Virus record (IMG/VR): IMGVR_UViG_3300017917_001123
Span: 267,571-331,570 of that record
Strand: one strand, 5' to 3'
DNA: 64,000 nucleotides
Shown: positions 52,364 to 62,305 of the stretch, piece after piece
Position numbering within the stretch: position 1 is the stretch's first letter
How the letters are laid out: the number at the start of each line of letters is the position of its first letter
Made by a program: the position numbers and the translations under genes
Notes under the pieces: model-generated
What the model was told of the DNA's origin: nothing
What the model saw: only the letters and a program-made list of their open reading frames with translations
Database searches by the model: none

Positions 52364-52392
52364 TTGACGGGCTCGTCAACTTGTTTTATAAT
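52364..52392 (+). promoter_or_regulatory. sigma70 promoter for the microprotein/tmRNA unit
   Basis: TTGACG-17 nt-TATAAT; -35 is within the inverted repeat TTGACG-GGCT-CGTCAA. Confidence 0.8.
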
Positions 52393-52417: not shown

Positions 52418-52489
52418 ATGGCATATAGAGCTAAAAATGGTAGCGTAAAGGCAGCGGCACGTAGAGCATTACGTCGTCGACAGAAATAA
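52418..52489 (+). CDS. 23-aa highly basic microprotein
   Basis: GAAAGGA SD; MAYRAKNGSVKAAARRALRRRQK; not in ORF track. Confidence 0.65.
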   Translation: MAYRAKNGSVKAAARRALRRRQK

Positions 52490-52569
52490 TTTTATTGCTG
52501 TATGAAGCAAACCCAAAAGGGTTCTGGACGCGGGTTCGACTCCCGCCAGGTCCACCAAAAGAGGATTGT

Positions 52570-52644
52570 ATGAACGAAGAAGTAACTAAATGGATGCTGG
52601 GCGTGGGCCTAGTTCTTTTAATGTTCTTTTTAGTCCTTTTTTGA
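52570..52644 (+). CDS. 24-aa membrane microprotein inside the tmRNA intervening sequence
   Basis: GAGGA SD at 52561-52565; MNEEVTKWMLGVGLVLLMFFLVLF-TGA. Confidence 0.55.
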   Translation: MNEEVTKWMLGVGLVLLMFFLVLF

Positions 52645-52734
52645 TGGGCCTGTACTGGATTTCGACAGGGTCAAGAGTAGGCGAGTGGACAGCACGGTAG
52701 GCGATGACCGTAAATCAAGCAAAACAAAATAGAC

Positions 52735-52767
52735 GCAAACGATGAAGTTTACGCATTGGCGGCCTAA
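52735..52767 (+). other. tmRNA tag reading frame (A)ANDEVYALAA
   Basis: AAAATAGAC-GCA resume context; C-terminal LAA degron; TAATAA stop. Confidence 0.92.
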
Positions 52768-52811
52768 TAACGGCTTCCTAGGGTAGGAAATACCTCGTAA
52801 CAGAAAATACC

Positions 52812-52838
52812 AAAAGGCTCTTCGGAGCCTTTTTCTTT
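52812..52838 (+). terminator. intrinsic terminator after tmRNA
   Basis: AAAAGGCTC-TTCG-GAGCCTTTT followed by a T tract. Confidence 0.9.
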
Positions 52839-52853
52839 GAGTCAAAAAATGTC

Positions 52854-52882
52854 TTGACTCTTCAGTGAAAACACTATATAAT
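52854..52882 (+). promoter_or_regulatory. sigma70 promoter for the outer-membrane protein gene
   Basis: TTGACT-17 nt-TATAAT. Confidence 0.75.
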
Positions 52883-52959
52883 ATTCTAAGCTGTGTTGTT
52901 TATCTAAGTGTTACACATAACGAAATGGCACACAGTTAATACATAAAGGAAATTTAAAA

Positions 52960-53424
52960 ATGAGAAAATTCGCAATCGCATCAATCTTGGCTTTGGCCGC
53001 AGTTTCAGCTTCGGCTGTAGAACTTGGCGTTACCGCAACACGTGGTGACACCACAGGTGATACTCGCAACTACGCAGGTGTTACCCTTGGTCAAAGTTTT
53101 GGCAAGCTAAATGCAACTGCTGGCTTTGAGCGTTCAACTGTTGGCGCACAGGGCAATCAGAACCGCTGGAGCTTGGTTGGTGGATACGACATTGCCAAGG
53201 TTGGTCCAGTTACTTTTACTCCTAAACTTGGTTATGCTTACTTAGACAATCAGACTCCGGGTGTTGCCAGCGGCAATGCTTATACAGTTGGTCTAGGCGC
53301 ATCATACGCTCTCACTAAGCAAGTTAGCCTTACCGCAGACTATGCTTATCAAAAGGCCTTTGAAACAAAGGTTGAGCAGTTTGATGGCAACCGAGTTACA
53401 TTGGGTGCTAAGTACCGCTTCTAA
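52960..53424 (+). CDS. small outer-membrane beta-barrel protein (OmpA-TM/OmpX-like)
   Basis: Sec signal MRKFAIASILALAAVSASA, alternating beta pattern, C-terminal YRF. Confidence 0.88.
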   Translation: MRKFAIASILALAAVSASAVELGVTATRGDTTGDTRNYAGVTLGQSFGKLNATAGFERSTVGAQGNQNRWSLVGGYDIAKVGPVTFTPKLGYAYLDNQTPGVASGNAYTVGLGASYALTKQVSLTADYAYQKAFETKVEQFDGNRVTLGAKYRF

Positions 53425-62230: not shown

Positions 62231-62305
62231 GCGTCTGTAGCTAAGTGGCATAGCAGGAGCCTCTAAAACTCTGAATCGCGGGTTCGATTCCCGCCAGACG
62301 CACCA
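62231..62305 (+). tRNA. tRNA with CUA anticodon (amber-suppressor-like)
   Basis: acceptor GCGTCTG/CAGACGC+ACCA; D arm GCTA/TAGC; anticodon arm GGAGC-CTCTAAA-ACTCT (CTA at 62263-62265, C31-A39 mismatch); T arm GCGGG-TTCGATT-CCCGC. Confidence 0.85.

What the first reader, a model, noticed from the sequence alone, without database searches (positions are those of the whole stretch)
52490..52810. Phage-encoded circularly permuted (two-piece) tmRNA
Seen: the tRNA-like 3' half (T arm, CAGGTCC-ACCA) precedes the 5' half (GGGCCTG..GGATTTCGAC). The acceptor stem pairs 7/7 with G3-U70, the tag is ANDEVYALAA, and a terminator follows. Known: two-piece tmRNAs occur in Alphaproteobacteria, some marine cyanobacteria and some Betaproteobacteria; phage tmRNAs are known but are usually described as one-piece. 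No smpB is in this window, so host SmpB would be needed. Inference: it maintains or retunes ribosome rescue and ClpXP tagging during infection and may hint at host lineage.
Basis: partly seen in the sequence, partly recalled or inferred. Interest (0 to 1): 0.75.

Follow-up and report, generated by a model that had tools for sequence, protein, structure and literature searches.

The report
Phage two-piece tmRNA carrying a mini-gene
A 331-kb pond phage really does encode a circularly permuted, two-piece tmRNA, which is a known kind of phage gene; the stretch cut out between its two halves is a small conserved gene for a 24-residue membrane-type peptide, which I found described in no paper.

Summary
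ARAGORN calls a permuted tmRNA with tag ANDEVYALAA. Rfam beta_tmRNA scores 152.6 bits (cut-off 84) and tmRNA_permuted 132.8 (cut-off 47). The acceptor stem pairs 7/7 with G3·U70, and a promoter and a terminator hairpin flank the gene.

The window is the end of a 331,570-bp IMG/VR phage record from a pond. The record uses the standard code and has no SmpB anywhere.

Phage two-piece tmRNAs are already documented: 53 of 133 unique phage tmRNAs, including Stenotrophomonas phages and Xanthomonas jumbo phage XacN1. The gene itself is therefore a new member of a known kind, and a weak host marker.

The new part is the 88-nt intervening segment. It reads ACCA, Shine-Dalgarno, ATG, 24 codons, TGA, U, then G1 of the coding piece. 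The same layout occurs in 52 loci (51 beyond the window), giving 35 different hydrophobic peptides of 19-27 aa. Support for coding:
- Codon-phased variation, with 64% U at codon position 2.
- An invariant Gly that uses all four codons.
- A covarying stem that pairs the Shine-Dalgarno with the last codons.

The cassette swaps independently of the tmRNA body (r = 0.08). Translation and peptide function are untested. In three of four lake metatranscriptomes a relative's intervening segment is missing while both pieces are abundant.

The parts
52364..52392 (+). Sigma-70-type promoter TTGACG-17-TATAAT, 11 of 12 consensus positions, likely start of the tmRNA precursor transcript
   Evidence: scan; sequence
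52418..52489 (+). 23-codon basic ORF (MAYRAKNGSVKAAARRALRRRQK) with GAAAGGA upstream, lying in the leader between promoter and tmRNA; not conserved in relatives, status uncertain
   Evidence: upstream context differs in related loci; no Pfam match
52496..52557 (+). Acceptor piece: 5' strand of helix P2 (UGCUGU 52496-52501), T arm 52530-52546, acceptor 3' strand 52547-52553, ACCA 52554-52557; true 5' end unknown
   Evidence: Rfam alignments; covariation
52558..52645 (+). 88-nt intervening segment, expected to be removed from the mature RNA; its two ends form a 13-bp closing stem coaxial with the acceptor stem
   Evidence: fold, -43.9 kcal/mol, z -5.99; covariation
52561..52565 (+). Shine-Dalgarno GAGGA of the mini-cistron, 4 nt before the ATG; paired with the last codons of the ORF in the folded precursor
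52570..52644 (+). Mini-ORF, 24 codons plus TGA: MNEEVTKWMLGVGLVLLMFFLVLF; the stop ends 1 nt before G1 of the coding piece
52646..52840 (+). Coding piece: acceptor 5' strand 52646-52652, P2 3' strand (ACAGCA 52689-52694), tag frame, 3' helices and terminator
52735..52770 (+). Tag reading frame GCA..GCC TAA TAA = ANDEVYALAA plus two stops
   Evidence: same tag in relative L138
52812..52840 (+). Terminator-like hairpin AAAAGGCUC-UUCG-GAGCCUUUU followed by UCUUU
   Evidence: matched as the 3' hairpin of RF01850

Best explanation
This is a working phage copy of a beta-type two-piece tmRNA gene that also serves as an expression slot for a small peptide.

Inferred pathway, from established tmRNA biology:
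1. Host RNA polymerase starts at the consensus promoter (52364-52392) and stops at the hairpin near 52835.
2. The precursor folds so that the acceptor 3' strand pairs across 88 nt with the acceptor 5' strand.
3. Host RNase P cuts before G1 (52646), which has the favoured U at -1.
4. The intervening segment is trimmed back to ACCA (52557).
5. Two RNAs remain, held together by the acceptor stem and helix P2.
6. Host AlaRS charges the RNA through G3·U70.
7. Host SmpB and EF-Tu deliver it to stalled ribosomes.
8. The tag ANDEVYALAA is added for ClpXP-type proteolysis.

The benefit to the phage is probably extra ribosome-rescue capacity while host mRNA is being destroyed.

The intervening segment is not a spacer. 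It is an exact mini-cistron (SD, ATG, 24 codons, TGA) for a peptide with an acidic head and a hydrophobic helix. I take this to be a small membrane peptide made only in a short time window. That window lasts from transcription of the SD until the last codons are transcribed, after which they pair with the SD and RNase P and 3' trimming destroy the message. Such tight limits are typical of toxic small membrane peptides. The slot is exchanged between phages as a cassette by recombination in the near-invariant flanks.

Shown here: the gene anatomy, covariation, the coding signature and cassette exchange. Inferred: processing enzymes, charging, translation, and what the peptide does.
For: tmRNA identity
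- ARAGORN calls tmRNA* with tag ANDEVYALAA. RF01850 scores 152.6 bits and RF04321 132.8 bits.
- The RNAalifold consensus of 33 related phage genes has 39 pairs, 19 with compensatory changes, in P2, the T arm, the acceptor stem and the closing stem.
- ARAGORN calls a permuted tmRNA in 163 of 164 related regions. 134 tags end in LAA.

Phage context and SmpB
- Phage context is shown.
- No SmpB is present in the record or in five other large phage records.

Expression in a relative
- In lake metatranscriptome contigs of relative L017 the coding piece reaches depth 8313 and the acceptor piece 100-415.
- The intervening bins read 0 in three of four runs, and the upstream flank is at most 46.

Mini-cistron
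- 12 of about 119 loci from a scan blind to the segment's content, and 52 loci in all, share the layout.
- The layout is ACCA, SD, ATG, 19-27 codons, TGA, U, then G1. There are 35 unique peptides.
- Column entropy by codon position is 0.96/0.48/1.22. pN/pS is 0.55 in frame against 0.76 and 1.37 out of frame, with 151 and 31 stops in the other frames.
- An invariant Gly is written GGT, GGC, GGA and GGG.
- U is 64% at codon position 2 against 24% and 35% at the others. Segments without an ORF have 30% T.

SD sequestration
- The fold gives -43.9 kcal/mol, z -5.99.
- Seven compensatory pairs support it. The first nucleotide of the segment covaries with the third base of the last codon (UA 27, AU 10).

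Cassette behaviour
- Body and peptide identity correlate at r = 0.08.
- L126 and L197 have 98% identical bodies but unrelated peptides. L126 and L140 have identical peptides in bodies 69% alike.
- Strongly supported branches of the body tree force at least 17 gains or losses of the ORF.

Virus-specific
- At least 119 viral contigs match the long-segment pattern, against one contig among the genomes of 185,579 species. That contig is a mis-binned relative of this phage.
Against: - No RNA data exist for this phage. Only one pond DNA run holds it.
- The metatranscriptome evidence comes from a relative, from assembled contigs, and at 90% likeness. A hole in such data proves nothing, and conserved parts may come from other organisms.
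- Zero steady-state signal over the intervening segment also means that a stable mini-mRNA is not seen.
- pN/pS of 0.55 is only moderately below 1. The last five codons are constrained by RNA pairing, so part of the conservation is not at the protein level.
- The start (AAGAG-like) and the end (TGAU) of the segment are also conserved in relatives without an ORF. SD and stop could therefore be exapted structural motifs.
- The second scan pattern forced the ending TTW-TGA-T, which biases the sample.
- No peptide matches any Pfam or PHROG family convincingly.
- The host is unknown, so compatibility with its SmpB and AlaRS is assumed.
Confidence: 0.6

Rival explanations
1. The tmRNA is real, but the ORF in the intervening segment is not translated. 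It would be a by-product of RNA-level constraints: a closing hairpin whose 5' strand happens to look like an SD, a TGAU box that pairs with ACCA, and a U-rich filler.
For: - Relatives without an ORF keep the same AAGAG...CUCUU-UUGAU ends and a closing hairpin.
- The SD is buried in a 13-bp stem in the minimum-energy fold.
- The intervening segment is absent from three of four metatranscriptomes.
- There is no family match for the peptides.
Against: - An ATG at the right distance and an open frame running to the TGA occur in 52 loci. These fall into at least seven peptide groups with no evident sequence similarity.
- Indels come in whole codons.
- Variation is codon-phased, and U enrichment is confined to position 2.
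- The other two frames hold 151 and 31 stops.
- Segments without ORFs are not U-rich.
Confidence: 0.2
2. The ORF is translated, but only the act of translation matters. A ribosome running to the UGA, 1 nt before G1, opens the closing stem and covers the acceptor 5' strand. tmRNA maturation would then be coupled to how busy the ribosomes are, so that more free precursor folds when translation falters.
For: - The stop sits 1 nt from the RNase P site in all 52 loci, although the second scan pattern forced that ending; the 12 loci from the content-blind scan show it too.
- SD and last codons pair with each other, and ACCA pairs with UGAU, so ribosome position must change the fold.
- Peptide sequence is very variable between groups.
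Against: - Hydrophobic character is kept in all but one of the unrelated groups and is codon-phase specific, which points to selection on the product.
- Many closely related tmRNAs do without any ORF, so it is not needed for maturation.
- Cassettes move independently of the tmRNA body, as cargo would.
Confidence: 0.15
3. The phage tmRNA is a decoy or competitor that blocks or diverts host trans-translation rather than supplying it.
For: [quoted passage not shown] The phage brings no SmpB of its own.
Against: The gene keeps a complete canonical tag frame with an Ala resume codon, an ALAA end and double stops. G3·U70, P2 and the T arm are under compensatory selection. 134 of 163 related tags end in LAA.
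Confidence: 0.05

Closest known systems
Betaproteobacterial two-piece tmRNA (Rfam RF01850; Sharkady and Williams 2004, as cited in PMC9004378)
   Same: Permuted gene order, full-length match to the model at 152.6 bits, P2 and 3' hairpin architecture, and a 10-residue ANDE..ALAA-type tag.
   Different: It is encoded by a phage without SmpB. The intervening segment has about 72 nt where the model consensus has about 13 at that insertion point, and it holds an ORF. The promoter lies further upstream, with a small ORF in the leader.
Permuted tmRNAs of isolated phages: Stenotrophomonas phages Marzo, Mendera and Moby, Alcaligenes phage vB_Af_QDWS595, Xanthomonas phages BUDD and XacN1, and OM43 phage Melnitz
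   Same: They are phage-borne two-piece tmRNAs. Marzo and QDWS595 also pass the beta model (94.6 and 93.8 bits). All three examined keep a TGAT box before G1 and a closing hairpin.
   Different: The three isolates examined have no ORF in the intervening segment. BUDD reached only the general permuted model (77.5 bits). Melnitz is of the alpha type and carries a glutamine riboswitch instead. No isolate shares the cassette by nucleotide similarity.
Other cargo in tmRNA intervening sequences (tRNA-Ala gene; repetitive element) noted in the 2025 tmRNA database paper, PMC11915505
   Same: It shows that the intervening sequence of permuted tmRNA genes can carry extra elements.
   Different: Those are single cases of an RNA gene or a repeat. 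Here it is a protein-coding mini-cistron, recurrent in dozens of viral contigs.
Type I toxin small hydrophobic peptides (Ibs, ShoB, TisB, Hok), from my own knowledge
   Same: They are 19-30-residue peptides that are almost all one hydrophobic helix, and translation is held down by sequestering the SD in mRNA structure and by processing.
   Different: There is no sequence-family match. No antisense RNA was looked for. Toxicity is untested. The location inside an RNA gene is unlike any of them.

Membership tests
Two-piece (circularly permuted) tmRNA, beta type | Covariance-model score above the curated threshold | tested here: met
   RF01850 152.6 bits against 84; RF04321 132.8 against 47
Two-piece (circularly permuted) tmRNA, beta type | tRNA-like 3' half (T arm, acceptor 3' strand, ACCA) lies upstream of the 5' half | tested here: met
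   52530-52557 precedes 52646-52652; ARAGORN tmRNA*
Two-piece (circularly permuted) tmRNA, beta type | 7-bp acceptor stem with G3·U70 (AlaRS identity) | tested here: met
   7/7 pairs; G·U invariant in 37 sequences and positions 2-4 covary
Two-piece (circularly permuted) tmRNA, beta type | Helix P2 joining the two pieces, and the T arm, maintained by compensatory change | tested here: met
   19 of 39 consensus pairs have double changes
Two-piece (circularly permuted) tmRNA, beta type | Tag frame starting at an Ala resume codon and ending in a hydrophobic AA-type terminus plus stop | tested here: met
   GCA...GCC TAA TAA = ANDEVYALAA; 134 of 163 related tags end in LAA
Two-piece (circularly permuted) tmRNA, beta type | Pseudoknots flanking the tag frame | not tested
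   The tools used model nested pairs only; I did not trace pseudoknots by hand
Two-piece (circularly permuted) tmRNA, beta type | Precursor processed into two RNAs with loss of the intervening segment | tested here: inconclusive
   There is no RNA run for this phage. In relative L017 the intervening bins read 0 in three of four metatranscriptomes while both pieces are covered, but these are contigs and include other organisms
Two-piece (circularly permuted) tmRNA, beta type | Works with SmpB | not testable with these tools
   No SmpB in the phage record or in five other phage records; the host and its SmpB are unknown
Two-piece (circularly permuted) tmRNA, beta type | Alanylation and tagging activity | not testable with these tools
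   Needs biochemistry or genetics
Type I toxin-like small membrane peptide (for the mini-ORF) | Short peptide dominated by one hydrophobic helix | tested here: met
   The mean Kyte-Doolittle value of the last 15 residues over 35 peptides is 3.16
Type I toxin-like small membrane peptide (for the mini-ORF) | Sequence membership in a described toxin family | tested here: not met
   No Pfam match; best PHROG E-value 0.012, to a family of unknown function
Type I toxin-like small membrane peptide (for the mini-ORF) | Translation restrained by mRNA structure over the SD | tested here: met
   Closing stem with covariation
Type I toxin-like small membrane peptide (for the mini-ORF) | Antisense RNA antitoxin; toxicity on expression | not tested
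   No antisense promoter was sought specifically; toxicity needs an experiment

The most novel reading that the evidence does not exclude
The intervening segment of phage permuted tmRNA genes is a general, recombination-swappable expression slot. A strong RNA-gene promoter and the host's tRNA-processing enzymes define and then destroy a minimal mRNA for a small membrane peptide. The peptide would be made only in the brief interval before the tmRNA matures. Once RNase P and 3' trimming remove the stop codon, the remnant could even become a non-stop substrate for the very tmRNA it was cut from. That would be a new gene-within-an-RNA-gene architecture and a new way of timing expression.
Probability: 0.4. 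Interest if true: 0.8.

Novelty: new variant of a known kind. Interest (0 to 1): 0.6.

Why it matters
The tmRNA alone adds one more jumbo phage to a documented list. The mini-cistron would matter for three reasons if it holds up.

1. It would show that the 'junk' removed from two-piece tmRNA precursors can carry protein-coding cargo, which current annotation pipelines cannot see.
2. It would give a compact natural example of a peptide gene whose ribosome-binding site, last codons, stop codon and RNase P site are all interlocked with a tRNA-like fold.
3. It would offer a family of at least 35 very small membrane peptides from uncultivated freshwater phages, made early in infection, whose targets are unknown.

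It also shows that the type of tmRNA carried by a phage should not be used on its own to infer the host.

Tried and rejected
- Two IMG/VR scans were wasted on a pattern with one N too many. The error was found by testing on the window.
- Megablast of 20 kb of the window against isolated phages found nothing.
- Sensitive blastn of the tmRNA, and of two relatives' genes, against isolated phages matched only the T-arm region. No cultured phage with the cassette was found.
- The large protein search refuses queries under 40 aa, so the peptides could not be searched there.
- Pfam and PHROGs gave nothing usable for ten peptides.
- No RNA run holds the window's phage. I used a relative instead.
I therefore could not compare with bacterial beta-type genes or name a host.
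- The 2004 paper on the beta lineage is not held. Supplements of the 2025 database paper had no phage table.
- I considered stop-codon recoding because of the tRNA with anticodon CUA. I rejected it: ORFs of at least 100 aa cover 92% of the genome under the standard code.
- I suspected tRNA genes inside some intervening segments. ARAGORN showed that L043 is simply a tRNA cluster, a false pattern hit, and that L051 and L054 have none.
- The upstream 23-codon ORF is not conserved in relatives. I do not count it as part of the system.

Full report
**1. What is there**

The sequence at 52490-52840 reads, in order:
- the 5' strand of a long-range helix (UGCUGU, 52496-52501);
- a T arm (52530-52546);
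- the acceptor 3' strand CAGGTCC (52547-52553) and ACCA (52554-52557);
- 88 nt of intervening sequence (52558-52645);
- the acceptor 5' strand GGGCCTG (52646-52652), followed by TACTGGATTTCGAC;
- the partner of the first helix (ACAGCA, 52689-52694);
- a tag frame GCA...GCC TAA TAA (52735-52770);
- a terminal hairpin (52812-52833).

ARAGORN reports a permuted tmRNA with tag ANDEVYALAA. Rfam gives beta_tmRNA 152.6 bits against a gathering score of 84, over the whole model. The general tmRNA_permuted model gives 132.8 against 47. A TTGACG-17-TATAAT promoter sits at 52364-52392.

**2. Where it lies**

The window is the last 64 kb of a 331,570-bp IMG/VR viral record that CheckV rates 93% complete.
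- GC content is about 41%.
- It carries tail proteins, ribonucleotide reductase and RIIA.
- The whole record has seven tRNAs and this one tmRNA.
- It uses the standard code. ORFs of at least 100 aa cover 92% of it.
- It has no SmpB.
- Only one public run holds it, a pond metagenome, with no RNA.

**3. Is a phage two-piece tmRNA new? No.**

Buchholz et al. 2022 (PMC9004378) found 133 unique tmRNAs in 18,146 phage genomes, 53 of them two-piece by ARAGORN. Their Table S1 lists Stenotrophomonas phages Mendera and Moby, the 385-kb Xanthomonas phage XacN1 and others as permuted. The 2025 tmRNA database (PMC11915505) holds 79 phage sequences.

I confirmed three isolates directly:
- Marzo, annotated as tmRNA, scores 94.6 bits on the beta model.
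- Alcaligenes phage QDWS595, where the gene is unannotated, scores 93.8 bits on the beta model.
- Xanthomonas phage BUDD scores 77.5 bits on the general permuted model.

To my knowledge Stenotrophomonas and Xanthomonas carry standard one-piece tmRNAs. I did not test this here. If so, the phage's tmRNA type does not report the host's.

**4. Comparative support for function**

A scan of IMG/VR joined the T arm, ACCA, a 62-92-nt gap and the 5' half.
- ARAGORN calls a permuted tmRNA in 163 of 164 extracted regions. 134 tags end in LAA.
- RNAalifold on 33 of them predicts the tRNA-like domain with 39 pairs. 19 have compensatory double changes, in P2, the T arm and the acceptor stem.
- None of five large phage records with such genes has SmpB.
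- Only one of the five shares RIIA with this phage, at 58% identity. The gene is therefore spread over different phage lineages.

**5. Expression, in a relative only**

The gene of L017 was laid on contigs of four freshwater and lake metatranscriptomes.
- The coding piece reaches word depth 8313 in one run.
- The acceptor piece reaches 100-415.
- The upstream flank is at most 46.
- The bins over the intervening segment read 0 in three of the four runs.
- The fourth run has one precursor-like contig from a diverged relative.

This fits transcription and removal of the intervening segment. However, contigs at 90% likeness mix organisms, and a gap in them is not proof.

**6. The intervening segment is a mini-cistron**

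In the window it reads AAA-GAGGA-TTGT-ATG, then 23 more codons, TGA, T, then G1. The peptide is MNEEVTKWMLGVGLVLLMFFLVLF.
- Twelve loci of the first scan, which was blind to the content of the segment, have the same layout.
- A second scan for the segment's ends again hit the limit of 119 contigs.
- The same pattern found one contig among the genomes of 185,579 bacterial and archaeal species. That 7.6-kb contig carries homologues of two window genes, so it is a mis-binned phage fragment.
- In all, 52 loci, the window among them, give 35 different peptides of 19-27 residues in at least seven groups with no evident sequence similarity. Nearly all have a short polar head and a hydrophobic helix to the very end.

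**7. Is it coding?**

These figures come from the 25 unique sequences of the main group unless stated otherwise.
- Length differences are whole codons.
- Column entropy is 0.96, 0.48 and 1.22 for codon positions 1, 2 and 3.
- One Gly is invariant but uses all four codons.
- pN/pS is 0.55 in frame, against 0.76 and 1.37 in the other frames. Those frames contain 151 and 31 stops.
- Over all mini-ORFs, U makes up 64% of position 2 but 24% and 35% of positions 1 and 3. Intervening segments without an ORF have 30% T.

Hydrophobicity is therefore a property of the reading frame, not of the RNA. The signal is good but not overwhelming. The peptide is short, and its last five codons are also constrained by RNA pairing.

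**8. The interlock with the fold**

The window's precursor folds with the acceptor stem continuing into a 13-bp stem. In that stem the SD and spacer (52557-52569) pair with the last codons and the stop. The energy is -43.9 kcal/mol with z = -5.99.

Across 37 unique sequences this stem has compensatory changes.
- The first nucleotide after ACCA covaries with the third base of the last codon (U with TTA, A with TTT). This decides whether the peptide ends in Leu or Phe.
- ACCA pairs with the TGAT box before G1.

Isolates without an ORF keep the same AAGAG...CTCTT-TTGAT ends. The SD-like strand and the TGA were therefore probably structural first and were recruited later.

**9. The cassette moves**

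On a tree of the tmRNA bodies with the intervening segment left out, presence of the ORF needs at least 17 changes on well-supported branches. Identity of body and identity of peptide are uncorrelated, r = 0.08 over 496 pairs.
- Four pairs have bodies at least 95% identical but peptides under 40% identical (for example L126 and L197).
- Eight pairs have peptides at least 90% identical in bodies under 75% identical (L126 and L140 share an identical peptide at 69% body identity).

Recombination in the nearly invariant flanks is the simplest explanation. Independent movement argues that the peptide is cargo with a value of its own.

**10. Mechanism proposed, and its status**

Shown:
- the anatomy;
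- the covariation;
- the coding signature;
- cassette exchange;
- absence of SmpB.

Inferred from established tmRNA biology:
- RNase P cleavage at G1, aided by U at -1;
- 3' trimming to CCA;
- charging through G3·U70;
- use of host SmpB;
- ClpXP-type targeting by the ALAA end.

Inferred by me: the peptide is translated from the nascent precursor before the closing stem forms. Folding and processing then shut it off. This would keep a potentially membrane-active peptide at a low, early dose.

**11. Rivals**

The rivals are that the ORF is untranslated, that only the act of translation matters, and that the RNA is a decoy. The first two are live, and the experiments listed would separate them.

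**12. Literature**

Three full-text searches and two targeted readings found no description of an ORF in a tmRNA intervening sequence. The 2025 database paper mentions only a tRNA-Ala gene and a repeat there. The library is incomplete, so novelty is provisional.

**13. Verdict**

The tmRNA is real, and it is a new member of a known kind. The mini-cistron makes this locus, and dozens like it, a new variant worth a bench test.

Noticed in passing
window 62231-62305 (+): There is a tRNA with anticodon CUA (amber suppressor; ARAGORN labels it Pyl; Rfam tRNA 65.1 bits). The genome otherwise reads in the standard code: ORF coverage is 92%, and TAG ends 32 of 371 long ORFs.
   Followed up: partly
window 52854-53424 (+): A 154-aa outer-membrane beta-barrel protein (Pfam Porin_4 3e-9, OMP_b-brl 1.6e-7) has its own TTGACT-17-TATAAT promoter directly after the tmRNA. 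Homologues (36-63% identity) lie on the same strand in 24 of 154 related loci, and 21 of them start 177-348 nt after G1. The tmRNA-OMP pairing is therefore conserved, and it suggests a Gram-negative host.
   Followed up: partly
window 52418-52489 (+): A 23-codon, very basic ORF with a ribosome-binding site lies between the promoter and the tmRNA. It would be on the same transcript. It is not conserved in related loci and has no Pfam match.
   Followed up: partly
L017, L045, L111, L134, L174, L179, L186, L224 and others: Many related phage tmRNAs encode unusually long tags of 23-31 residues that still end in ALAA, for example ANADTFDFSAMSFTGNTVSGKSKVALAA. 34 of 163 tags are 20 residues or longer.
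   Followed up: no
L045 5756-6013 (-); same upstream sequence in L017, L042, L071: A cold-shock-protein-like gene (KWFNDAKGFGFI...DLFAHFS motifs, recognised by eye and not run against Pfam) ends just upstream of the tmRNA in several relatives.
   Followed up: no
L012, L056, L070, L075, L079, L103, L110 (87-nt segments); L028, L124, L137, L153, L159, L160 (86-nt segments): Other long intervening segments without ORFs recur nearly unchanged in many viral contigs. They may be structured RNAs or other cargo.
   Followed up: no
L003 541-917 (Alcaligenes phage vB_Af_QDWS595, OK149171.2): A permuted tmRNA (tag ANDNVYAAAA, beta_tmRNA 93.8 bits) and a neighbouring tRNA with anticodon UUA are not annotated in the public record.
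   Followed up: partly
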